This document shows, in pieces, positions 19,281-62,110 of a stretch of 64,000 nt of DNA. Numbering within the stretch: the stretch's first letter is position 1; each line of letters opens with the position of its first letter. Both the position numbers and the translations under genes were made by a program. The notes beneath the pieces were generated by a model, which was given only the letters and a program-made list of their open reading frames with translations, was not told where the DNA came from and did not search any database. The stretch is taken from NCBI RefSeq assembly GCF_006345805.1, contig NC_043013.1:29326001-29390000 (forward strand), in the 5' to 3' direction. The stretch comes from Octopus sinensis. Its lineage: Eukaryota.

Positions 19281-19951
19281 ATACCAGGACGGTTTACCTC
19301 AACCCCCCAACCACCGTTACCATCTCTATTACTTCCAGCAGCAACACCACCACCACCACCAGTTTTATCGCTGCTGCCGCCTCATCATCACTATGACTGC
19401 GAACCTCCCTTCAGTTTCACCTCATTCTTCATCTTCTTCACCATCATCTCTGTAAACATCAAGCACCACCACTACCACCACCAAGGCAACAACCAGCATC
19501 TCAATAATAATAATGATAATAATAATAATCGTCATTTTTTCCCCATTATGACGATCGACGTTGTCATTCTCACCAACAACATCCACAAGCAGCGTAATCA
19601 TCAGCCAAAAATTGTGCTAATTACTACCGGCGCAGCCTCCACCACCACCACCACCACCACTTCCACCACAACCCCACCGCAACCACCACCACAACCACCA
19701 CCACCATCACAACCAACGCCGCCGTCATCGTCGCTGCCGCATCCACCACCTCCATCGCAGCCACCTCCACCTCCAACACAACCACCACCACCACCACCAT
19801 TGACGCCGCCAGCGCCGCCCCCACTACCATCACCACCAACACCAACACCAACACCACTGACAGCAACGTCAACAACAACGCCACTACTACTACCACCACC
19901 ACCACGATCACCACCACCACCACCACCACCACCACCACCACCACCACCACC

Positions 19952-19985
<34 letters not shown>

Positions 19986-20002
19986 ACTACTACTACTACT
20001 AC
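19280..20002. repeat. Cryptic trinucleotide low-complexity tract (CAC/CCA/AAT/TAC)n
   Basis: Direct reading; explains ORFs 19237-20078. Confidence 0.85.
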
Positions 20003-27244: not shown

Positions 27245-28005
27245 AGGGTGCGGTGAATAAAATGTCTAAATTACGCAAGAATGAAAATAGCACTCAAGTC
27301 TCATTTTAACGCATATATTTACCAAAATTAAAAAGAAATATCTTGAAATACTGAAGAGTATATTTATTCAATAAAATCGCTATTGGCTCCAGCCAAGGCC
27401 TCCAGACGACGTCGGAATCTCTTGAAAACTTCTGGACAGTCACCTTGTTTAAGTTGGTGACTGCTGCCATAATCCTTGCCTTCATTTCGTCTTTGGTGTT
27501 ACAAGGAATTTTGTCGGTCTCTCGCTCAACTGCGCCCCACATAATAATCATGGCAGTTGCACTCTGGGGAGTGATGTGGTGGCCGAAATTGTCTGACAGC
27601 CATGACTTGGTTTTCCTGTTCATGTGGCATGGTGCAGAGTCCTGTAGCCAGACACAGGGTCTTCTAGCAGCCACCCTACTGACACAGGGCGGCACTACCT
27701 CCTCCAGGCACTTGATGTAGACCTCCGTGTTGAGTGTGAGCCCGTGCGGGAAGATGAATGGAGGCATAACCTCACCACCACTAGTGATCACTCCAAACAC
27801 CATGATGTTGACTGGATGTTTGATTTTTATCAATCTCAGTACATGTCTTCAGATTGCTCTGTCCTCAGATTGATACCCAGACACTCTGAAATGTTCGCAT
27901 TGGAGATTCCGGCGCGAATGACAAGCAGTGCATATCGTTTCCCAATTTACTGGTAGAGTGAATTGCATCATGGTGCTGTTTTTTCTCACAGACGGTGCCC
28001 TGCTA
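27245..28005 (-). mobile_element. maT/DD37D-like mariner transposon relic
   Basis: ORF 27306-27833: HPVNIMVFGVITSGGEVMPPFIFPHGLTLNTEVYIKCL..WLQDSAPCH..WGAVERET; termini begin CAGGG. Confidence 0.85.
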
Positions 28006-33289: not shown

Positions 33290-33750
33290 TGGGTGTTGTG
33301 ATGGAACACCGAATATTCTTTTCTACTTGAGCACACAAGGGCCGAAATTTTTTGGTGGGGAGGCCAGGCGATTAGATCGACCCCACTACCCACCTGGTAC
33401 TTAATTTATCGACCTCGAAAGGATAAAAGACAAAGTCGACCTTTGCGGAACTTGAACTCAAAACGTAAAGATAGACGAAATACTGCTAAGCATTTCGGCC
33501 GGTGTGCTAATGTTTCTTATTTCTTTACTGACCACAAGGGGCTACACACAGAGGGCACAAACAAGGACAGACAAACGGATTAAGTCAATTATATCGACCC
33601 CAGTACTCAACTGGTATTTATTTAATCGACCCTGAAAGGATGAAAGGCAAAGTCGACCTCAGCGGAACTTGAACACAAAACGTAAAGACAGACGAAATAC
33701 TGCTAAGCATTTCGCCCGGTGTGCTAACGTTTCTGCTAGCTCGCCGCCTT
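33290..33750 (-). mobile_element. SINE family A dimer
   Basis: Two units joined at aaataa|gaaacattagcac. Confidence 0.9.
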
Positions 33751-35083
33751 TGGAACACCGAATATTGCGATCGTTGACACGAAAGAATCTCTCATACGGT
33801 TTTGTAGTGGAAATAAGCACTCTTGCTTGCAGTGCTTATATATTACTTTTTGGCATTAAGACTGTGTCTGTTGCTTTGATTATTAGCTATTTTATTATTT
33901 CATTATATAACGTAGATATCACTTTTGTTTGATGAAGCTCGTATTGTTCAAATATTATCTGCTGTAAGTTGTGTCTATATATTTTATCAAACAAAAGCTT
34001 TTGAAACAAAACTCGTTGGATGATATTTCGCGATAAAATTTAGCATGTCGTGAATGTTAATTAAAAGGAATAGAGGAAGAATGTTGACAAAAATATAAAA
34101 ATAAATAAGCTAAATCATTATTATTCCTGTTGTATGACCGACTTTTTGTATAAATGATATATTATGCTTTTTTTCTATTAGCGGAAGTCGGTAATCTGAT
34201 AATAAAGTACACATGATACAGTCAACGGAAGAACTTCTACATGGTTTTTGGATCTGCTAGAAATAACAAACAAATCTCCCTCGATTTCCCATTCTCCAAG
34301 GTAGAAAAAAAAAAGCACTTTGGGAAATGTCGTGCGTGAACTGGTCATCAAAAAAAAAAAGAATATAGGATTGTCATGTCTGGAGTGCCTGGATAATAAT
34401 AGGTCTGTTCTGTGTGTGTGCTGTGGAATGGGTGACACAGGGATGACTTGAGGGTGAATAAGAATGATTTCGTCAACAACCGCCTTCGCCAACGCCGTCA
34501 TGAAAATGGATGTATCTTTAAAGACGACAATATTCAAATATCCATCAAAAACGTGGAAAACGATAATATGCATTAAAATTCTTTTTTGTTAATATTGACG
34601 GAAATTGAAGGGCAGAGTTTATGACTCAGGATCTCCAGGACTGGAGGTGGGAAGTGGGAGGGAGGGAAGTTGTGTTCAGAGCAGAGACCCATGCCGAATA
34701 CTTGTCCAAAAGAATGGATTCCACTGAAATCTCTCAAGACCCAGGTTGTTATGTTTAGCTAGGTAACAGTTTAAGCTTATCACTCCAATATAGAAACAAT
34801 GAAGAATTCAACAAAGTTTTCGATAATCAAATAATGTCGCTCATATTTCTTCGGTCGAACGAGGATTAAGGTTGAAGATATTCAAGACTATGCACAGTAT
34901 CAACGAACCCGAAATCACGTAGTTATGAAACGAACTTGCTAACCGTGCAGCACTGCCTGCAATATGTGCGTCTATTTTAAGAATATACACTTTAATCAGG
35001 TAGGATTGGGCTTGAAGATCAATATGTCTGAGATATAATATAAGTGAAAGGGTCTTAATCTTTCGCATTATTAACATCATCCA

Positions 35084-45845: not shown

Positions 45846-46687
45846 TTCGATTAAGTTACCTCTAAGCTAAACTGACCGTCTGCATAGACGAAAAGGGCTA
45901 ATTATATATATATATATATATAATTTAGGTTAGTTGAAATATGTTAGTAACATATTTCAAATGCTAAAAGCAAACAACCAAATACCTATAGAATCACATA
46001 CACAGACATCTTGTGTCTCAACAGACACAAAATGTCTAATAAAATCATTTTCTGAAATAAACTTTTAAATCCACATCCACTAAAGAAGCACTAAGGAACA
46101 TTACAAGTGAATAAAAAAGAATATTAATAACGAATACTGAATAGCTTAGCAGATTAAGCTATCGAAGTATACAAGTTCAACCTCATAAGTATAAGAATAA
46201 AAAGGCGGAAAATAAACATATAGAACCAAATGAAGTCTAGTTGTATAATGGATAAATACAGTTTTAAACATTCACATAACCGAGCATAACATGTGTTATA
46301 CCTGGCCATATATTCATAGTATATATTACAACACTGCGATTACAGAAGAAAACCCCCCAAAAACAAAACAAACAAAACATCCCATTGACACAAAATCACA
46401 AGAAATGTACGTCGGACAACTAATATGATATAAATATAAAGATTTAAATGCAAATATTTATAGGGGCATACATGCATGCTACTTTCTCGTCGGTTGACAA
46501 TGCATCTACAAGATGAGAAAATTTTTTATGGAAGTCTTATTGATAGCTAACAGAAACCCCATAAACCAAAATCCAGATAGAATATGCGTGATATATAATA
46601 AAGTACCAGTCAAATACAGAATCGATAGTATCTATTAAACCCCTCTCCTCATAATTACTGGTTTTGTGACTTAATTAGAAATAATTA

Positions 46688-48801
46688 CGTTGGTCAACAC
46701 ACTTTTTGCTGACCGGTTTTGTGATTGCTTTTAGTTAAATTTGAGACACTGATTTCAAATATGGCATCCATTTCCCCACTAACACATCAGGTTTTCATTC
46801 TTCAGCAACCCCTATTTTATGATGTACTGTATAAATAATTTATTTGGTCAGATAAGTTTACAAACCATAAGTTATAAATGTCATTAGAAAATGAAACGTA
46901 AGACAGCATCACCTTTTACCAAATACATACTATTAAGTTTCTAATATGATGGATAAAGCACAAAACCATCGTACATATATCTTCATATTCATGGAACAAA
47001 TTTTCGCTTGTGGAGTATTTCATGTCTACACAGTCTTTTTGAATACTCAAACAGTAGTCTGCCATCAAGAGTGTGTTCCATCGGCCTTGATATCTCTCTG
47101 CCATAGTCTTGATTGCTTGATGAAAATGCTCACTATGCCCATCACTCACGTGTCCGAGATTAGCAGGAAATTCATCGAGATGGCTATTGAGGAAATGAAG
47201 CATTATGCCCATGTTACATAATACCCTAAATGATGAAAGTTATCAAATAATGTCTCCACCAAATCCTTATTCGCAGCCTTTTCACTCCCACCAAATCCTT
47301 TCACAACAGCCACAAATGAATATCATGTTCTTTTTTCTATGTCAGCCATTAAGCTCGGGAAATTCTGGCATTTCATTTACTTTCTGATTTATGACCCATC
47401 AAAAACACCAGCCGCTATTTTATCATAACTTAGGCCAGGAAATGTCACGTATATGAATTTGAAACTGCTACCTTCTACATTAAGAGCTTTAACAAATTCC
47501 TTCATTAGTCCCAGTTTAATATGAAGGGGTGGAAAGATGATATTCTCTCGCTCAGCAAGTAGTTGGTGTATGATTTCTTCTCTCCAACAGTCAAACTTTA
47601 TTTAACTGGCCAGAGTTTCTGTTCCCAATGCTTGTCTCTCACTCGGCTATCCCATAAACACAGGAAGCACAGATATTTAGTATACCCTCCTTGTTGGCCA
47701 AATAAAATGTTGGCCATTTTTACATGCACAAATATGACCCATTTGTGTTCATTATACTTTAGTAAATCTAATACAACCTTTATGTAATCATAATTCTTTT
47801 AAGTGCACAGACTGACCAACAGGAAGCGCATCAAACAAGTTTCCATTATAGAGTAATACACATTTTAGACTCTTCCTTGATCTATCTATAAAGAGTCTCC
47901 ATTCACTAGGATCATACTGTTCAACACCCATCACGTTTAACAGTCCCGCCACACCACAACGGTAAACAAAATCTTTTCCAGTTGTAAAGAATGCCAAGAG
48001 ATATTTTTCCTTGTTCTGATAAAAAATCATGTTTGTTTCTTTTTGCAACAAATTCTTCTCTTTAATTCTAGAAGCTAACAGTTCTGATAATTCTTTTGAC
48101 AGTCCTAGATCATTAAGTTCTGCCTGATTGAAGTTTTCACGTTCTTTGGTTGATGTTTCTACAAAGTCTATATCACTGTCATGTTCATAATTTATATCTA
48201 CTTCACATCTATCACTTTCACTTTGCAGTGAAGGTAGTTCCTTGAAAACAGGTACTGGTATTCTATCTGAGTGAAGCACTGGATGGATTGCTGAATCCAG
48301 ATTTGGGTAACTTATTTTCTGTCACGCTCTGTTGCTATAACAAGGTCTTTGTGAGACAAAAGTAGCAGTCGTTTACATGACTCTTTGGCTCCCTCGATAT
48401 CATAGAAATGCCAAATGTTAGCTGTTTCCTTGTGTTCTTTGTCCATTAGCATACATTTTCGACATAGGGTTTACATATATTGTGCCGTCCCGTGATTTAT
48501 CCTGATCACCAACTTTAATCTTCACGTAAGACAAGTAGGATCTTTTCACAATGTCACCAACATTCATTCTTTGAATTGGTACTGTAAAACACCCACATAT
48601 ATAACAAAAAGAGTCAGGGGAATTCAAACATTTCAAACATGGAGCTACGGGAGGGGCCAATATGGGCCAGCCCATAGAAAAAGAAATACATGTGATAGGA
48701 CAAAAACTATTGCCATTTTAAAACTCAGTGACCCCCAACTTACTCTAGACAGGTCTCAAACTTAGGCCAGCTGAAAAAATGTTAGAATTAGTTGGCCAGT
48801 G
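46688..48801 (-). mobile_element. Chapaev3-like (CMC) DNA transposon, near full-length, degenerate
   Basis: CLNSPDSFCYICG..GDQDKS; EWRLFIDRSRKSLKCVLLYNGN; LHFLNSHLDEFPANLGHVSD..FHQ..RYQGRW..MADYC; imperfect TIRs, right end CACTGGCCAAC on minus. Confidence 0.8.
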
Positions 48802-49189
48802 TTATTTATTTAGTTTCATCCTTGTTGTGATTTACTAGACCTTTGCTTGAAGGCATTCCATCCGTCATCATCGATATTATTATACATAGTGTATCTAAGA
48901 TTACATTATCCTATGTATTTTGTAATTTTCTAAGATGGTAGAACGAACCTCAGATGTACTTTTGAATAGAATAAACGCAATATAGCAGGAGATAAGCTTC
49001 TCGCCAGCCGATATGACTGTGGTTTCAATACCTGACCGAGACCAATTCGTCTTGCGTGCATAACTAATATACTAAGAAAAATTAAGAATGGTTCACGTTC
49101 CACTTTTTCTGGTGTCCTTAATATTGAAATTGTAGGATCTTTTTGTCTAATGGACTCGATATAATAGTTACAAATTTTGGAACAGGGTT

Positions 49190-49572: not shown

Positions 49573-50075
<503 letters not shown>

Positions 50076-50229
50076 TATAGGCGTTGGAGTGGGTGTGAAT
50101 TCACGTGTCTATATAAATGTGGATATGCTGATTAGCTTTTATATGTTCCGATGACGCTTGGTCGGAAATATAAGAGGTAAGTTTTTCTAGCATTTCTAGA
50201 TTTATTTACCAGAATATAATGTTGATAAA

Positions 50230-50455
50230 GGAAATGAATCTTATGATTCTAATCCAGAAACGTACGTCCGTAATTAACCGAGGACTGTTTGATTTCATTA
50301 TTTTTCTTCTTTTTTTTGCCATATGTGAGTTACAAATATTGTTGTCTGTGGAGACATATTCTTGTAGAAAAAGGAAATAGTAGTCCTTTGGCTGCTATTT
50401 CTAAAATTTTCGGTATGTGGTCATGCAACTTGTTACAAAGCCTTATTCTTATAGT
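50230..50455 (+). mobile_element. Diverged, inverted relative of the tandem-array monomer (3' half of HHR retained)
   Basis: GAAACGTACGTCCGTA at 50257-50272; 50374-50447 aligns to the reverse complement of the monomer. Confidence 0.7.
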
Positions 50456-50773
50456 TTTATATATATATATATATATATAATTATCCGTAATAATGAAGGG
50501 TGAAATTAATTAATTTGGAATAATTATCAATTACACCAAGTAGTCTTCGGCATGTAAAAGCCTCATTCGAGGAAAATTTAAGTAATACTAAGCAATAAAG
50601 GGTTTAGCAACGAATTGCCTTACCACATACCGAATTTAGAAATAGCAGTCAAAGGGTTATAGCTATTTCTTCTACTAAAAAGGGAGATCTCAGTAAAAAC
50701 AGCAATTGGAAGGCAGACACAAACAGGTAAGAGAGAATGAATTGACTGCAATCTATCATACATTTTTAAGTTA

Positions 50774-50878
50774 TCTACGGACGTACGTTTCGAAATCATT
50801 TTTTAGGAAAGCATAAGAATTAAATATTAAATATTAAATAATTCTATCTTACCGAAACTTTTTTCTCTTCAGCGTAGA
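50774..50878 (-). ncRNA. Type I hammerhead ribozyme, array unit 1 (predicted cleavage after 50780)
   Basis: TCTACG-CTGAAGA-GAAA...TTTC-GAAA-CGTACG-T-C-CGTAGA. Confidence 0.85.
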
Positions 50879-51369
50879 ATACTATAATCATAAATGATTA
50901 TATATTGAATTTTGAGATACTAGAAGGCACCAACTCAACTCAGTATCAGAGCGAGCTAGAATCCGCAACTAGTATCACCGAATTCAATTTGTGAATGAAA
51001 CGATTGTGTCACCAGCCCCTTCCCACCCGCGTGTAGCCAAAACAAGATGCTGTGGTCATCTACTGAGATAAAATATGGTTATCCGTAATAATGAAGGGTG
51101 AAATTAATTAATTTGGAATAATTATCAATTACACCAAGTAGTCTTCGGCATGTAAAAGCCTCATTCGAGAAAATTTAAGTAATACTAAGCAATAAAGGGT
51201 TTAGCAACGAATTGCCTTACCACATACCGAATTTAGAAATAGCAGTCAAAGGTTATAGCTATTTCTTCTACTAAAAAGGGAGATCTCAGTAAAAACAGCA
51301 ATTGGAAGGCAGACACAAACAGGTAAGAGAGAATGAATTGACTGCAATCTATCATACATTTTTAAGTTA

Positions 51370-51475
51370 TCTACGGACGTACGTTTCGAAATCAAGTTTT
51401 TAGGAAAGCATAAGAATTAAATATTAAATATTAATAATTCTATCTTACCGAAACTTCTTTTCTCTTCAGCGTAGA
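51370..51475 (-). ncRNA. Type I hammerhead ribozyme, unit 2 (cleavage after 51376)
   Basis: Canonical core, stems intact. Confidence 0.88.
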
Positions 51476-51967
51476 ATACTATAATCATATATGATTATAT
51501 ATGAATTTTGAGATACTAGAAGGCACCAACTCAACTCAGTATCAGAGCGAGCTAGAATCCGCAACTAGTATCACCGAATTCAATTTGTGAATGAAACGAT
51601 TGTGTCACCAGCCCCTTCCCACCCGCGTGTAGCCAAAACAAGATGCTGTGGTCATCTACTGAGATAAAATATGGTTATCCGTAATAATGAAGGGTGAAAT
51701 TAATTAATTTGGAATAATTATCAATTACACCAAGTAGTCTTCGGCATGTAAAAGCCTCATTCGAGGAAAATTTAAGTAATACTAAGCAATAAAGGGTTTA
51801 GCAACGAATTGCCTTACCACATACCGAATTTAGAAATAGCAGTCAAAGGGTTATAGCTATTTCTTCTACTAAAAAGGGAGATCTCAGTAAAAACAGCAAT
51901 TGGAAGGCAGACACAAACAGGTAAGAGAGAATGAATTGACTGCAATCTATCATACATTTTTAAGTTA

Positions 51968-52074
51968 TCTACGGACGTACGTTTCGAAATCAAGTTTTTA
52001 GGAAAGCATAAGAATTAAATATTAAATATTAAATAATTCTATCTTACCGAAACTTCTTTTCTCTTCAGCGTAGA
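51968..52074 (-). ncRNA. Type I hammerhead ribozyme, unit 3 (cleavage after 51974)
   Basis: Canonical core, stems intact. Confidence 0.88.
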
Positions 52075-52562
52075 ATACTATAATCATAAATGATTATATA
52101 TTGAATTTTGAGATACTAGAAGGCACCAACTCAACTCAGTATCAGAGCGAGCTAGAATCCGCAACTAGTATCACCGAATTCAATTTGTGAATGAAACGAT
52201 TGTGTCACCAGCCCCTTCCCACCCGCGTGTAGCCAAAGCAAGATGCTGTGGTCATCTACTGAGATAAAATATGGTTATCCGTAATAATGAAGGGTGAAAT
52301 TAATTAATTTGGAATAATTATCAATTACACCAAGTAGTCTTCGGCATGTAAAAGCCTCATTCGAGGAAAATTTTAATACTAAGCAATAAAGGGTTTAGCA
52401 ACGAATGCCTTACCACATACCGAATTTAGAAATAGCAGTCAAAGGGTTATAGCTATTTCTTCTACTAAAAAGGGGATCTCAGTAAAAACAGCAATTGGAA
52501 GGCAGACACAAACAGGTAAGAGAGAATGAATTGACTGCAATCTATCATACATTTTTAAGTTA

Positions 52563-52665
52563 TCTACGGACGTACGTTCGAAATCAAGTTTTTAGGAAAG
52601 CATAAGAATTAAATTTAAATATTAAATAATTCTATCTTACCGAAACTTCTTCTCTTCAGCGTAGA
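52563..52665 (-). ncRNA. Hammerhead, unit 4, one A missing from GAAA
   Basis: Reads GAA-CGTACGT; this unit has several homopolymer deletions, possibly sequencing error. Confidence 0.6.
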
Positions 52666-53160
52666 ATACTATAATCATATATGATTATATATTGAATTTT
52701 GAGATACTAGAAGGCACCAACTCAACTCAGTATCAGAGCGAGCTAGAATCCGCAACTAGTATCACCGAATTCAATTTGTGAATGAAACGATTGTGTCACC
52801 AGCCCCTTCCCACCCGCGCGTGTAGCCAAAACAAGATGCTGTGGTCATCTACTGAGATAAAATATGGTTATCCGTAATAATGAAGGGTGAAATTAATTAA
52901 TTTGGAATAATTATCAATTACACCAAGTAGTCTTCGGCATGTAAAAGCCTCATTCGAGGAAAATTTAAGTAATACTAAGCAATAAAGGGTTTAGCAACGA
53001 ATTGCCTTACCACATACCGAATTTAGAAATAGCAGTCAAAGGGTTATAGCTATTTCTTCTACTAAAAAGGGAGATCTCAGTAAAAACAGCAATTGGAAGG
53101 CAGACACAAACAGGTAAGAGAGAATGAATTGACTGCAATCTATCATACATTTTTAAGTTA

Positions 53161-53266
53161 TCTACGGACGTACGTTTCGAAATCAAGTTTTTAGGAAAGC
53201 ATAAGAATTAAATATTAAATATTAAATAATTCTATCTTCCGAAACTTCTTTTCTCTTCAGCGTAGA
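53161..53266 (-). ncRNA. Type I hammerhead ribozyme, unit 5 (cleavage after 53167)
   Basis: Canonical core, stems intact. Confidence 0.88.
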
Positions 53267-53783
53267 ATACTATAATCATAAATGATTATATATTGAATTT
53301 TGAGATACTAGAAGGCACCAACTCAACTCAGTATCAGAGCGAGCTAGAATCCGCAACTAGTATCACCGAATTCAATTTGTGAATGAAACGATTGTGTCAC
53401 CAGCCCCTTCCCACCCGCGTGTAGCCAAAGCAAGATGCTGTGGTCATCTACTGAGATAAAATATGGTTATCCGTAATAATGAAGGGTGAAATTAATTAAT
53501 TTGGAATAATTATCAATTACACAAGTAGTCTCGGCATGTAAAAGCCTCATTCGAGAAAATTTAAGTAATACTAAGCAATAAAGGGTTTAGCAACGAATTG
53601 CCTTACCACATACCGAATTTAGAAATAGCAGTCAAAGGGTTATAGCTATTTCTTCTACTAAAAAGGGAGATCTCAGTAAAAACAGCAATTGGAAGGCAGA
53701 CACAAACAGGTAAGAGAGAATGAATTGACTGCAATCTATCATACATTTTTAAGTTATCTACGGACGTACGTTTCGAAATCAAG

Positions 53784-53817
<34 letters not shown>

Positions 53818-53914
53818 CGGGAAGCTTTATGAAAATAAACAAAAGACGAAGGCAGGTGGAAAACAAACGAACAATTGTATTAGTATGGCGCTCAGGAAAT
53901 ATAAATAAAACAAG

Positions 53915-53952
53915 TCTTTAACGTTTCGAGCCTACGCTCTTCAACAGAAAGA
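53915..53952 (-). ncRNA. Variant minimal hammerhead (CUGUUGA), family D, best-preserved copy
   Basis: TCTTT-CTGTTGA-A-GAGC-GTAG-GCTC-GAAA-CG-T-T-AAAGA; stems I and II perfect, palindromic ACGT stem III. Confidence 0.6.
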
Positions 53953-54149
53953 TACACAGAGAGAGACATATATACATACATACTTAAATATATACATACA
54001 TGCATACATACATAAATATATACATACATGCATACATACATAAATATATACATACATACATACATACATACATACATACATACATACATACATACATACA
54101 TACATACATACATACATACGTACGTACATTTATACACATGCAGGAGGTA

Positions 54150-54490
54150 AATAGACACCTTTAATTTGCAAAATCTTTTATTTAATAAGCAAAGCGAACA
54201 ATTGAAATGTAATCGATAGGTAGGACTACAAACATTAGTACTTAATTGAGATTCCCTTCGCAGTTTTTAATTCAGAAGCCCTTTTTGGCATTGAACTGAT
54301 GAGCTTTGTGATTGTCTCTGGTGGAATTTCTGCCCACTTTTCACGCAACAATCGAAACAATTCATCTTTAAATTTAAGTTTCTGTCGAGTTTTTCGTATA
54401 GCTCTATCTAATACGCTCCAAAGATTTTCAATTCGGTTCATGTCAGGAAAGGAAGCTCGGCCATTTTCAGTCAGCCATTGTTGATTCCCT
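54150..54490 (-). mobile_element. Tc1-like transposase 3' fragment
   Basis: FPDMNRIENLWSVLDRAI..EIPPETITKLISSMPKR..AKG..KY. Confidence 0.8.
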
Positions 54491-54514
54491 TTCGTTGTGG
54501 CATACACACACACA

Positions 54515-54621
<107 letters not shown>

Positions 54622-54939
54622 CAGTATTCTGATTAAAAAACGAAGGTCACATACAATTAAATGTTTAATGTATCGTATGATGCAGAATTACATAATTTAA
54701 TCATACAGCTTATCTTTCTACGATTTTGGAGATCGTTAAAGCTGTATCAAAAATCGTTGGGAGAGAACTCTGTTTAATTTTGAAGAAGTAAAGTTTCCAT
54801 AGAGAAGAGTTCAAGCAAAAATTCTCGAAGAGAAAAGGAACGAAAATTAAAAAAGACAATAAAAAGAACGGGTAAAATGTTTGAGGATATCCCCAAAATT
54901 CAAGTGGTTGGAAAGAACTTCAACCAAGAATTATTTCAA

Positions 54940-57547: not shown

Positions 57548-58625
57548 TTAGGTTGGCAACCAAGTTCCCGCCGTTTTGTTTTTTAAATTTTTTTAAGGGT
57601 TTAATAAAAAATAACAACTAATTAATGAATAATGTATTCACCCTTGTTGTTTACAACTTCTTCCCAACGTTCAACAAGATTTTCAATACCTCGTTGGTAG
57701 AAAACACCCAATTTTGACTCGAGAAATTGATCCAACCAAGCTCTCAATTCTGCATCAGTATTGAACGAAACTCCGCGCATAGCATTTGAAAGAGATCGAA
57801 AGAGGTGGAAATCCGTTGGTGCCAAATCAGGAGAGTACGATGGGTGTGACAGCACTTTCCAGTCATGCGTTCCAATGGCTTCCTTGGTCATATTGGTGAT
57901 ATGAGGGCGGGCGTTGTCGTGCAGCAGAAGAACTACATGCTGACGATTAGGTCTTTTCTCATGAATACCGTGTTGAGTCGTTCCATTTGTTGGTTCCGTT
58001 CAAGCAATTCGTAATGGATAATCCCTTCCTAGTCCCACCATACGCACAACATCGTTTTACGCGGATAAAGATCTTGTTTCACGCGCGGTGTCGCTTGTTT
58101 ACCGGGGCTAAGCCATTCCTTACGCTGCTTCATATTGATGTAGTCACCATTTTTCGTCGCCAGTAACGATTCGGTTAAGAAATCGCTGCTTGTGTCCATG
58201 AGATTAGCGGTAACGAGCAAGCAAACCAGCGGAGATTGTGGCTCGTTGATTTTTGTTTTTGTCACTTAAAGCATGCGGAACCCATGTCCCATACTTATGA
58301 ACCTTTCCCATCAAGTGAAGATGCTTCTCTATAGCAGTGTGGGAGCATTTAATTTTCTCTGCCAGTTCCCTTGTCGTTTGACGAGAATTATCGTGCAAAA
58401 GTTGGTTTAATCGCTCTTCATCGAACTCAACTGGACGGCCAGAACGAAGTGGTTATTTGAGGTCAAAATTTCCAGTTTTTTAACTTGGCATATCAATAAT
58501 GAGCGGTTCTTTCAGATATGGCACCCTCTCCATACAGAGCACAAATACCGCGAGCTTAGATCCGCCCTATGCTATATGCTCATAAAATCGTTTCTCCGGA
58601 TATTGTAGCGTATATATTTTCCACT
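57548..58625 (-). mobile_element. mariner (DD34D-type) transposon, degenerate, one TIR
   Basis: TA|TTAGGTTGGCAAC terminus; WVPHAL, KTMLCVWWD and HPSYSPDLAPTDFHLFRSL motifs. Confidence 0.9.
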
Positions 58626-60355: not shown

Positions 60356-60692
60356 ATAGAAGATATAAGCATTCCAAACGTGACAATACATTTCTTTTTT
60401 TAAATCTAGGATTAGAATCTTTAAAAGTATTCTTCTTTAAAAAGAAACCCGTGGGTAGTTTATAATTTATTGAGATTCTTGGATTTCTCCAAAGCTTTGT
60501 AGTTGAAGTAGGAGCAAAAGATGAGTGGAAACTGAGAGACGTGTGAGAAATACTGTCTCGTGAGAGAACCGTATAAAGGCATACACAAAAGGCCGTCATG
60601 TTAGATCAATGAAAAATAGCCGAAGAAATGTGTAATAGAAAATATTTTAAGAAGCCTGAATATTGATTTTGGGGATTATTATAAAGTAGGTA

Positions 60693-61140
60693 AAGGCGGT
60701 GAGCTGGTAGAATCGTTTGTACGCCGGGCAAAATGCTTAGCGGCCTTTCATCCGTCTTAACGTTCTGAGTTCAAATTCTGTTGAGGTCGACTTTGCCTTT
60801 CATCCATTCAGGGTCGATAAAATAAGTAGCAGTTGAGCACTGAGGTCGATGTAATCGATATATCTCCTCGTCCGAAATTGCTGACTCTGTGCCAAAATTT
60901 GATACCATTATTATCAGACGGACGAAGACGGCGAGCTGGCAGTATCGTTAGCACGCCGGGCAAAATGAATAGAAGCATTTCCTCCGTCTTTATGTTCTGA
61001 GTTCAAATTCCGTTGAGGTCCACTTTGCCTTTCATCCTTTCGGGGTCGATAAATTAAATACCAGTTGAGCACTGAAGCCGATGTAATCGACTTATCTCCT
61101 CTCCCGAAACTGTTGGCCCTGTGTCAAAATTTGAAACCAT
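60693..61140 (+). mobile_element. Two consecutive SINE family A copies
   Basis: Sequence match, units at ~60693 and ~60930. Confidence 0.85.
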
Positions 61141-61249
61141 TTATTTCAAAATAAGATGTTGTGACCTTCCTTATATTTTTCATTGCGTGACTGTGAAAAT
61201 AGGGTGTGTGAATATTCTGAACAAACAACTGTGAATATTCTTTTCTACT

Positions 61250-61850
61250 CTATGCACAAGGCTTTAAATTTGGGGAGAGGAGGCCAGTTGATTACATCGA
61301 CCATAGTACGCAACTAGTGCTTAATTTATCGACTCCGAAAGGATGAAAGGCAAAGTCTACCTCGGCGGAATTTGAACTGAGAACGTAGCGGCAGACGAAA
61401 TACGGCTAAGCATTTCGCCCCACGTGCTAACGTTTCTTATTTTTTTATTGTCCACAAGGGGCTAAACATAGAGAGGACAAGCAAGGACAGACAAACGGAT
61501 TAAGTCGATTATATCGACCCCAGTGCTTCACTGGTACTTAATCGACCCCGAATGGATGAAAAGCAAAGTCGACCTCGGCGGAATTTGAACTCAGAACGTA
61601 GCGGCAGATGAAATACCTATTTTTTTACTACCCACAAGGGGCTAAACACAGAGGGGACGAACAAGGATAGACAAACGGATTAAGTCGATTACATCGACCC
61701 CAGTGCGTAACTGGTACTTATTTAATCGACCCCGAAAGGATGAAAGGCAAAGTCGACCACGGCGGAATTTGAACTCAGAACGTAACGGCTGACGAAATAC
61801 GGCTACGCATTTCGCCCGGCGTGCTAACATTTCTGCCAGCTCGCCGCCTT
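61250..61850 (-). mobile_element. SINE family A trimer
   Basis: Junctions aaatag|gtatttc (~61615) and aaataa|gaaacgttagcac (~61435) on minus. Confidence 0.9.
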
Positions 61851-61854
61851 TGCA

Positions 61855-62110
61855 ACTGTGAATATTGTGATTACTTTCACTATGGCAAACTCGTGGTTTC
61901 GATCCCTGGACAGTGCAGTGCGCTGTGCTCTTGAGCAAAACACTTCATTTCACGTTGTTCCAATTCACTCAACTGCAAATGAGTAAAGCTGCGACAGACT
62001 GGTGCCCCGTTCAGTGAAAATGTTGTGATCTCTGTCACTTATACGCCATGGAAACCGAGTAACAATCTCTATGAGTTCAAGGGCTCGAGACAGTACTTAC
62101 TTATTAAACG
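61855..62110 (+). mobile_element. Third SINE family (CORE-like ttgagcaaaacactt...ttcactcaactg..aatgagt), decayed
   Basis: B-box-like ggtttcgatccc followed by a CORE-like segment. Confidence 0.45.

What the first reader, a model, noticed from the sequence alone, without database searches (positions are those of the whole stretch)
50481..53785. Tandem array of ~597-nt hammerhead-ribozyme monomers: candidate cephalopod retrozyme/circRNA retroelement
Seen: 5.5 near-identical head-to-tail units between two (TA)n tracts, with no ORF-track entry over 50481-53602. On the minus strand units 1, 2, 3 and 5 contain TCTACG-CTGAAGA-[stem II]-GAAA-CGTACG-TC-CGTAGA; unit 4 lacks one A of GAAA and the partial sixth unit has only the 3' half. 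That gives a perfect 6-bp stem I, canonical core, GUC cleavage triplet and a self-complementary stem III (ACGTACGT). Stem II (GAAAAGAAGTTT/AAACTTGATTTC) carries a long insertion with its own AGAATTA/TAATTCT helix. Predicted cleavage sites 50780, 51376, 51974, 52569, 53167 and 53763 give monomers of 595-598 nt. Established: PLE pseudo-LTRs carry type I HHRs with palindromic stem III, and metazoan retrozymes are non-coding tandem HHR arrays that release monomers which circularise. Inference: read-through transcription would release ~597-nt RNAs able to circularise and be re-copied by a PLE reverse transcriptase. The monomer seems long relative to the few-hundred-nt metazoan retrozymes I recall. 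I do not recognise this family as described.
Basis: partly seen in the sequence, partly recalled or inferred. Interest (0 to 1): 0.95.

Follow-up and report, generated by a model that had tools for sequence, protein, structure and literature searches.

The report
Hammerhead-ribozyme tandem repeat (animal retrozyme)
This is a 3.3-kb head-to-tail array of a ~600-base non-coding repeat, each unit carrying a textbook self-cleaving hammerhead ribozyme motif; it fits the already described class of animal "retrozymes" (here probably in an octopus-like genome), so it is a new example, not a new kind.

Summary
Window 50481-53785 holds 5 full units (595-598 nt), a 305-nt partial unit and a 23-nt partial unit of one repeat, between (TA)n tracts. 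On the minus strand, four units carry a complete type I hammerhead: a 6-bp helix I, CUGAAGA, a G10.1-C11.1-closed helix II with a ~60-nt extension, GAAA, a 2-bp helix III with palindromic GUAC loop, and GUC. A fifth unit has homopolymer deletions, and the 23-nt partial unit keeps only the 3' half.

A descriptor scan finds these motifs nowhere else in the window, against 0.005-0.055 expected by chance. The ribozyme-strand RNA is unusually structured (z = -6.1, 22 G·U pairs) compared with its complement (z = -3.3, 6 G·U pairs).

I also found a diverged, inverted, ribozyme-dead partial copy next to the array, and an A-B-A-B pattern of substitutions among units.

No reverse transcriptase or GIY-YIG endonuclease lies in the 64 kb. 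Rfam models do not score the motif, probably because of the helix II insertion. No relatives could be retrieved.

Best reading: a metazoan non-LTR retrozyme, that is, a hammerhead satellite. Cleavage, circularisation and mobilisation by Penelope-like elements are inferred by analogy. Published retrozyme consensus lengths reach 972 bp, so the size is not exceptional. It is a new member of a known kind, of modest interest.

The parts
50481..53785 (-). Tandem array: 23-nt partial unit, 5 full units (consensus 600 nt, GC 34%) and a 305-nt partial unit, read 5'->3' on the minus strand
53161..53266 (-). Complete type I hammerhead motif (cleavage after C at 53167)
52563..52665 (-). Hammerhead with GAA for GAAA and a 2-nt deletion in helix II. 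Either defective or an assembly error.
51968..52074 (-). Complete type I hammerhead motif (cleavage after C at 51974). This is the reference copy that was folded.
51370..51475 (-). Complete type I hammerhead motif (cleavage after C at 51376)
50774..50878 (-). Hammerhead with intact core but weakened helix II (cleavage after C at 50780)
53763..53785 (-). 23-nt 'tail': the 3' strand of helix II, GAAA, helix III and GUC only. This is the 5' end of the array in RNA sense. It does not coincide with the cleavage site.
51833..51863 (-). Hairpin GAAAUAGC...GCUAUUUC at consensus positions 111-141, one per unit. It is the part best conserved in the diverged copy.
50080..50458 (+). Diverged, inverted partial copy of the same family. 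It keeps GAAACGTACGTCCGTA (50257-50272) and the hairpin (50374-50401). Its core is CTGATTA (G8->U) and it has no G10.1-C11.1 pair, so it is a dead ribozyme.
50458..50480 (.). (TA)n tract between the 3' ends of the array and of the inverted copy
53785..53816 (.). (TA)16 tract at the 5' end (RNA sense) of the array
50048..50079 (.). (TA)n tract at the outer end of the diverged inverted copy

Best explanation
The array is a metazoan non-LTR retrozyme, that is, a hammerhead-bearing satellite-like retroelement, probably in a cephalopod genome.

Shown here:
- It is a head-to-tail array of ~600-nt non-coding, AT-rich units.
- A canonical type I hammerhead motif sits on the minus strand of each complete unit.
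- Helix III (ACGUACGU) is self-complementary and is predicted to pair between two ribozymes.
- The ribozyme-strand RNA is predicted to be highly structured, and its global fold keeps helices I and II.

Inferred by analogy with published retrozymes:
- The minus strand is transcribed as a multimer.
- Hammerheads, probably acting in pairs through an extended helix III, cut after each GUC and release ~600-nt monomers.
- A host tRNA ligase closes the monomers into stable circles.
- A Penelope-like element encoded elsewhere reverse-transcribes uncut multimers or circles and integrates them at AT-rich or (TA)n DNA, giving tandem copies whose ends do not coincide with the cleavage site.
- At least one later step duplicated a two-unit block.
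For: - Every defining hammerhead nucleotide and helix is present in 4 units.
- A descriptor finds them only here, against 0.005-0.055 expected per random window.
- Helix lengths of 6 bp (I), 4 bp (II) and 2 bp plus GUAC loop (III) equal the published canonical metazoan type I architecture (PMC4209133).
- The two-ribozyme cofold gains 12 kcal/mol through an 8-bp intermolecular helix III.
- The minus-sense monomer has MFE -159.7 kcal/mol, z = -6.1 and 22 G·U pairs. Its complement has -129.6, z = -3.3 and 6 G·U pairs. The circular MFE is 65% paired and retains helices I and II.
- There is no ORF of 70 aa or more, and GC is 34%.
- A second, about 70% identical copy in the opposite orientation shows the family is older than this array and has inserted or been copied more than once.
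- Both copies abut (TA)n. PLE endonucleases prefer AT-rich or (TA)n targets, and PLE insertions form tandem and inverted complexes with short tails (PMC8557442, PMC11167929).
- The array ends lie at consensus positions 305 and 578, not at the cleavage site. This is expected if the template was an uncut multimer or a circle.
Against: - No Rfam hammerhead model scores the motif, even at E <= 10. I attribute this to the ~75-nt helix II and minimal helix III but could not test it.
- The units are 98.5-100% identical, so there is no covariation. The one diverged copy has lost the catalytic core.
- No reverse transcriptase or GIY-YIG domain was found in the 56 non-microsatellite ORFs of >= 100 aa that were scanned (fifteen ORFs of mostly microsatellite translation were left out).
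- No related sequence was found in any searchable collection.
- (TA)n tracts are very common here (89 tracts, 3.4% of the window), which weakens the target-site argument.
- The A-B-A-B substitution pattern shows at least part of the array grew by block duplication, which needs no RNA step.
- There is no expression or cleavage data.
Confidence: 0.75

Rival explanations
1. It is an array of pseudo-LTR material from an autonomous Penelope-like element. In other words, the 600-nt unit is the terminal repeat of a coding PLE present elsewhere in the genome, not a separate non-autonomous family.
For: PLE pLTRs carry type I hammerheads with small palindromic helix III (PMC4209133). PLEs insert as partial tandems with inverted truncated copies, short tails and (TA)n bias (PMC8557442, PMC11167929). 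A 2026 preprint finds retrozymes phylogenetically close to pLTRs (10.64898/2026.07.22.740005). Here there is a 23-nt tail, an inverted copy and (TA)n flanks.
Against: No RVT or GIY-YIG domain was found in the 64 kb. There are five consecutive units with no ORF between them. The hammerhead is of the canonical type: G10.1 follows A9 directly, helix I is 6 bp and helix II 4 bp. It is not the PLE 'minimal' type, which has a bulged base before helix II and a short helix I (PMC4209133). The inverted copy is about 70% identical and lies tail-to-tail, unlike a co-inserted head-to-head PLE copy.
Confidence: 0.12
2. It is a plain satellite or tandem duplication that carries a relic hammerhead. The array grew only by DNA-level unequal exchange, and the RNA is not cleaved or circularised today.
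For: The two-unit higher-order pattern of substitutions fits this. The locus is microsatellite-rich and recombination-prone. One or two of the five ribozymes are damaged. The neighbouring copy has a dead core.
Against: Four cores are perfect at all invariant positions, with GUC and intact helices. Strand-asymmetric structure with 22 against 6 G·U pairs suggests selection on the ribozyme-strand RNA. The published hammerhead satellites that were tested (newt, schistosome, cave cricket, coral, mussel, axolotl) proved to be transcribed and processed (PMC7229834, PMC6155905).
Confidence: 0.1
3. It is a chance motif or an assembly artefact, such as an over-expanded or collapsed repeat.
For: Most differences between units are single-base indels typical of long-read consensus error. 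Rfam gives no hit.
Against: The chance expectation for a motif of this quality is about 0.005 per window. Alternating substitutions distinguish the units, which argues for real, distinct copies. An independent diverged copy lies next door.
Confidence: 0.03

Closest known systems
Metazoan non-LTR retrozymes (coral Acropora, mussel Mytilus, axolotl; Cervera & de la Pena 2020, PMC7229834; vertebrate survey bioRxiv 10.64898/2026.07.22.740005)
   Same: Both are head-to-tail non-coding repeats of low GC, each with a type I hammerhead. Both have a weak palindromic helix III that implies dimeric action, a highly self-paired predicted monomer or circle, and no LTR, PBS or PPT.
   Different: The monomer is ~600 nt against 170-400 nt in the 2020 study, though inside the 51-972 bp range of the 2026 survey. 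Loop 2 is replaced by an internal loop plus a ~60-nt extension hairpin. The library searched here holds no report for cephalopods. Expression and circles are untested.
Hammerhead satellites: newt satellite 2, Schistosoma Sm-alpha, Dolichopoda cave-cricket pDo500 (cited in PMC6155905, PMC7761336)
   Same: Both are tandem genomic repeats whose transcripts carry a type I hammerhead. The newt motif works as a double hammerhead through helix III. From its name and my own recollection (the paper was not held), pDo500 is of similar unit size, ~500 bp.
   Different: There is no sequence similarity. The helix II extension here is much longer.
Hammerheads in the pseudo-LTRs of Penelope-like elements (PMC4209133, PMC8557442, PMC11167929)
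   Same: Both have a type I topology with a small palindromic helix III. Both show tandem and inverted insertion complexes, short 'tails', and AT-rich or (TA)n targets.
   Different: No RT/GIY-YIG ORF is present here. The motif is of the canonical type, not the 'minimal' PLE type. Units repeat without coding sequence between them.
Plant LTR retrozymes (PMC4918200)
   Same: Both have a ~600-1000-nt predicted structured circRNA and use a hammerhead to define the monomer.
   Different: The plant elements use type III hammerheads inside LTRs. They have a PBS, a PPT and 4-bp TSDs, GC above 55%, and depend on Gypsy-type elements.

Membership tests
Hammerhead ribozyme, type I | Invariant core C3 U4 G5 A6 N7 G8 A9 ... 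G12 A13 A14 | tested here: met
   CUGAAGA and GAAA are present in 4 of 5 complete units. The fifth has GAA.
Hammerhead ribozyme, type I | A15.1-U16.1 pair and a cleavable NUH triplet | tested here: met
   GAA-A CGUACG U C gives A15.1-U16.1, C15.2-G16.2 and the triplet GUC.
Hammerhead ribozyme, type I | Three helices around the core, with helix I open (5' and 3' ends in helix I) and a G10.1-C11.1 pair closing helix II | tested here: met
   Helix I is 6 bp (UCUACG/CGUAGA). Helix II has 4 bp starting with G-C, then a 2x2 loop, 6 bp and an extension. Helices I and II appear in the MFE of the motif, of the 598-nt monomer and of the circle.
Hammerhead ribozyme, type I | Scores against the curated covariance models (Rfam Hammerhead_1 and relatives) | tested here: not met
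   No hammerhead hit at gathering score or at E <= 10 on 4 kb. The likely cause is the ~75-nt helix II and the 2-bp helix III. A version with the insertion trimmed could not be scanned with these tools.
Hammerhead ribozyme, type I | Covariation that supports the helices across relatives | tested here: inconclusive
   The units are 98.5-100% identical. In the one diverged copy, helix I shows one compensatory change, one wobble change and one broken pair, and the core is lost.
Hammerhead ribozyme, type I | Self-cleavage after H17 | not testable with these tools
   This needs in vitro transcription of monomer and dimer constructs.
Metazoan non-LTR retrozyme | Head-to-tail tandem repeats, each unit with a type I hammerhead | tested here: met
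   5 full and 2 partial units with a period of 595-598 nt.
Metazoan non-LTR retrozyme | Non-coding, low GC (<45-50%), no LTR architecture | tested here: met
   No ORF of 70 aa or more. The longest ATG/TTG ORF is 59 aa and has no homologue. GC is 0.343.
Metazoan non-LTR retrozyme | Monomer size within the described range | tested here: met
   ~600 nt is outside the 150-450 bp of PMC7229834 but inside the 51-972 bp of bioRxiv 10.64898/2026.07.22.740005.
Metazoan non-LTR retrozyme | Highly self-paired predicted monomer or circular RNA | tested here: met
   z = -6.1 for the linear monomer. The circular MFE is -154.3 kcal/mol with 65% of bases paired.
Metazoan non-LTR retrozyme | Many dispersed genomic copies, and co-occurrence with PLEs in the genome | not testable with these tools
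   Only one extra diverged copy is visible in the window. There is no PLE ORF in the 64 kb. The source genome cannot be searched here.
Metazoan non-LTR retrozyme | Expressed as linear and circular monomer RNAs | not testable with these tools
   No transcript data are available.
Penelope-like element pseudo-LTR | The repeat flanks an RT plus GIY-YIG ORF | tested here: not met
   A Pfam scan of 56 of the 71 stop-to-stop ORFs of >= 100 aa in the window (the fifteen mostly-microsatellite translations were left out) finds only one sub-threshold DDE_3 transposase relic (E = 3.2e-05, 24.3 bits against a 28.6-bit cut-off).

The most novel reading that the evidence does not exclude
The array is the DNA footprint of an RNA replicon: a ~600-nt viroid-like circular RNA with a hammerhead in one polarity that was captured by a reverse transcriptase and endogenised. 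The analogue would be the carnation retroviroid-like element. In this reading it is not a PLE-dependent retrotransposon family. Nothing here excludes this. However, only one polarity has a ribozyme, no other ribozyme class scores in Rfam, and a decayed second genomic copy points to a resident genomic family.
Probability: 0.04. Interest if true: 0.8.

Novelty: new member of a known kind. Interest (0 to 1): 0.35.

Why it matters
If it is confirmed as active, it would extend retrozymes, which are ribozyme-made circular RNAs that spread as retroelements, to cephalopods, for which I found no report.

It would also give a natural hammerhead whose loop 2 is replaced by a long helical extension. That bears on how much the loop-loop tertiary contact is needed in vivo.

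The A-B-A-B unit pattern and the array ends that miss the cleavage site are small but testable clues. They bear on whether the template for reverse transcription is a multimer, a dimeric circle or a monomeric circle.

None of this changes the current picture of retrozymes. It adds one case.

Tried and rejected
- Rfam at gathering score over the whole window, and at E <= 10 on 50000-54000, gave no hammerhead or other ribozyme hit. It returned only spurious miRNA-like hits on the (TA)n tracts.
- TRF missed the array because its longest period is 500.
- Exact-pattern scans of public collections found no relative. I searched for the conserved hairpin block and for the hammerhead 3' half in the viral, metagenome and prokaryote-genome collections. 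The only result was four chance 18-mer hits in bacterial contexts with no CUGANGA upstream.
- The protein route to related contigs failed. The in-unit ORFs of 36, 36, 47 and 59 aa are not on record, and the 59-aa ORF has no homologue.
- A one-mismatch match, GAAATGTACGTC at 46402, has no upstream core and is consistent with chance.
I replaced them with concatenated ORFs of >= 100 aa.
- I tried to read a working hammerhead in the inverted copy and rejected it. CCGATGA and CTGATTA both break invariant positions, and there is no G10.1-C11.1 pair.
- I considered the (TA)n flanks as strong evidence of targeted insertion and downgraded them after counting 89 such tracts in the window.
- The cave-cricket pDo500 paper is not held, so that comparison rests on citations and on my own knowledge.
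Full report
**Observation**

The direct-repeat search finds six in-register copies with spacings of 593-601 nt across 50430-53821. TRF missed the array only because its longest period is 500. On the minus strand, CGTACGTC occurs six times. Its final C lies at plus-strand coordinates 50780, 51376, 51974, 52569, 53167 and 53763, which gives monomers of 596, 598, 595, 598 and 596 nt.

The array reads, in RNA sense on the minus strand:
- (TA)16;
- a 23-nt partial unit (53785..53763);
- five full units;
- a 305-nt partial unit ending at about 50481;
- (TA)11.

The consensus is 600 nt with GC 0.343. No stop-to-stop ORF of 70 aa or more lies between 50151 and 53606.

**The ribozyme motif**

Each unit junction reads UCUACG / CUGAAGA / G-AAA-[AG]-AAGUUU...AAACUU-[GA]-UUU-C / GAAA / C-GUAC-G-U-C / CGUAGA. 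This satisfies every invariant hammerhead position:
- the core C3-A9 with N7 = A;
- G12-A14;
- the pairs A15.1-U16.1 and C15.2-G16.2;
- the G10.1-C11.1 pair;
- the cleavage triplet GUC.

Helix I is a perfect 6 bp. Helix II has 4 bp, then a 2x2 internal loop, 6 more pairs and an extension that contains the AGAAUUA/UAAUUCU helix. Helix III has 2 bp capped by the palindromic loop GUAC. The published description of canonical metazoan type I hammerheads is helix I 6 bp, helix II 4 bp and helix III 1-2 bp with a small palindromic loop (PMC4209133). This motif matches it, except that loop 2 is replaced by an internal loop plus a ~60-nt hairpin.

My own descriptor required helix I >= 4 bp, helix II >= 3 bp, helix III >= 2 bp and up to 140 nt inside helix II. 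On both strands of the window it finds exactly four sites, all in the array. In 200 Markov-random windows it found a mean of 0.055 sites. At the observed quality (helix I >= 6 bp, helix II >= 4 bp) the mean was 0.005.

The fifth complete unit (52665..52563) has GAA for GAAA and lacks two A's in helix II. The unit at 50878..50774 has lost one G-C pair of helix II.

Rfam gives no hammerhead hit at gathering score or at E <= 10. I attribute this to the long helix II and the minimal helix III, but I could not test a trimmed version.

**Folding**

| RNA | MFE (kcal/mol) | z-score | G·U pairs |
|---|---|---|---|
| Minus-sense 598-nt monomer | -159.7 | -6.1 | 22 |
| Plus-sense complement | -129.6 | -3.3 | 6 |
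| Circular consensus | -154.3 | not computed | not counted |

- In the minus-sense monomer, helix I closes a ~480-nt branched domain and helix II forms as predicted.
- The strand difference in energy and in G·U pairs is what selection on the ribozyme-strand RNA would produce.
- The circularised consensus is 65% paired and retains helices I and II.
- Two hammerhead domains cofold at -49.6 kcal/mol, against 2 x -18.6 when folded separately. The gain comes from an 8-bp intermolecular ACGUACGU helix III (-11.2 kcal/mol), while helices I and II persist. This is the double-hammerhead arrangement described for newt, axolotl and PLE motifs (PMC4209133, PMC7229834, PMC6155905).

**Variation inside the array**

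Of 23 variable alignment columns, 18 are single-base indels in short runs. That pattern is typical of long-read consensus error, so the defective GAA may not be real.

The two informative substitution columns (consensus positions 336 and 485) alternate. Units 51376 and 52569 are identical in substitutions, and so are units 51974 and 53167. At least part of the array therefore arose by copying a two-unit (~1.2 kb) block. This could have happened at DNA level, or from a dimeric RNA template.

**A second copy**

BLAST and nhmmer find one more member of the family, on the plus strand at about 50080-50458. It is 70.6% identical over 136 nt (E = 7e-13 by BLAST, 8.5e-07 by nhmmer). It sits between the (TA)n tracts at 50048-50079 and 50458-50480, tail-to-tail with the array.

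It preserves GAAACGTACGTCCGTA exactly (50257-50272). It also preserves the hairpin GAAAUAG(C/U)...GCUAUUUC at 50374-50401, which corresponds to consensus positions 111-141. Its 5' core reads CTGATTA (G8 to U), and the G10.1-C11.1 pair is gone, so it is a dead ribozyme. In its helix I, one pair changed on both sides and still pairs (U-A to G·U), one changed on one side (C-G to U·G) and one is broken. This is too little to count as covariation.

The copy shows that the family is older than the array and is present at least twice. The conserved hairpin lies 111-141 nt downstream of the cleavage site. In the one PLE studied in vitro, the RNA needed for protein binding and the internal start of reverse transcription lie within about 150 nt downstream of the hammerhead cut (PMC11167929). 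A comparable role here is speculation.

**Surroundings**

I made a Pfam scan of 56 of the 71 stop-to-stop ORFs of >= 100 aa in the window. The fifteen that were mostly microsatellite translation were left out. The scan finds only one sub-threshold DDE_3 transposase relic at 57625-57999 (E = 3.2e-05, 24.3 bits against a 28.6-bit cut-off), and no RVT or GIY-YIG domain.

The ORF at 47791-48321 belongs to a TE-like protein family found across metazoans.

A Tc1-like relic at 27309-27848 has its best hit to an Octopus bimaculoides protein, at 60% identity. A 20-kb stretch of that genome shares several SINE-like repeats with the window at 70-88% identity. A cephalopod source is therefore plausible, though the species is not established.

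(TA)n tracts of six or more units occur 89 times and cover 3.4% of the window. The (TA)n flanks are compatible with the AT-rich or (TA)n target preference of PLE endonucleases (PMC8557442, PMC11167929) but are not strong evidence for it.

**Relatives elsewhere**

None could be retrieved. Pattern scans of the viral, metagenome and prokaryote-genome collections gave only four chance hits. The short in-unit ORFs are not on record and have no homologues. The collections available here do not allow a DNA search of animal genomes.

**Comparison with what is known**

Tandem type I hammerhead repeats in animals have been known since 1987. Since 2020 they have been interpreted as non-LTR retrozymes that are expressed as circular RNAs. 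Examples include a mollusc, with monomers of about 170-400 nt and PLEs as the proposed helpers (PMC7229834, PMC7761336). A 2026 preprint reports consensus lengths of 51-972 bp and a close relation between retrozymes and PLE pseudo-LTRs. I found no paper that reports hammerheads or retrozymes in cephalopods.

This locus meets every sequence-level criterion of the class. The functional criteria cannot be tested here: expression, circles, many dispersed copies, and PLEs in the same genome.

**Verdict**

It is best filed as a new member of a known kind, with a long helix II extension as its one unusual feature. The life-cycle steps are inferred by analogy. Interest is modest.

Noticed in passing
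window 50080-50458 (+): A diverged (~70% identical), inverted, ribozyme-dead partial copy of the same repeat family. It lies tail-to-tail with the array and is itself bracketed by (TA)n tracts.
   Followed up: yes
window 50780-53762, consensus positions 336 and 485: Substitutions alternate A-B-A-B between successive units, while the indels are scattered. This gives a two-unit higher-order repeat inside the array.
   Followed up: partly
window 60675-61138; also 15747, 31086, 33346-33771, 35063, 40982, 61229-61871: A tRNA-derived SINE-like family (GGCGGTGAGCTGGTAGAAT...GAGTTCAAATTC) in many copies. It includes a head-to-tail dimer with 232-nt spacing. No hammerhead core is in it. ARAGORN and Rfam do not call it.
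   Followed up: partly
window 46691-48805 (-): A relic of a transposon-like element whose ORFs (46919-47239, 47791-48321) belong to an unnamed protein family found in crustaceans, aphids, spiders, sponges and lizards. It is 78-79% identical at DNA level to copies in an ENA assembly (ERZ25072293).
   Followed up: partly
window 27309-27848 (-), 54238-54687 (-), 57625-57999 (-): Decayed Tc1/mariner-type transposase fragments. The first has its best hit in Octopus bimaculoides (60% aa identity).
   Followed up: partly
whole window: Extreme microsatellite load: 89 (TA)n tracts of six or more units, plus long (TCTG)n, (CT)n, (ACAT)n and (AC)n tracts and 8-nt-period arrays. At 19659-19992 a CCA/CCG-rich stretch translates into a proline-rich pseudo-ORF.
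   Followed up: no
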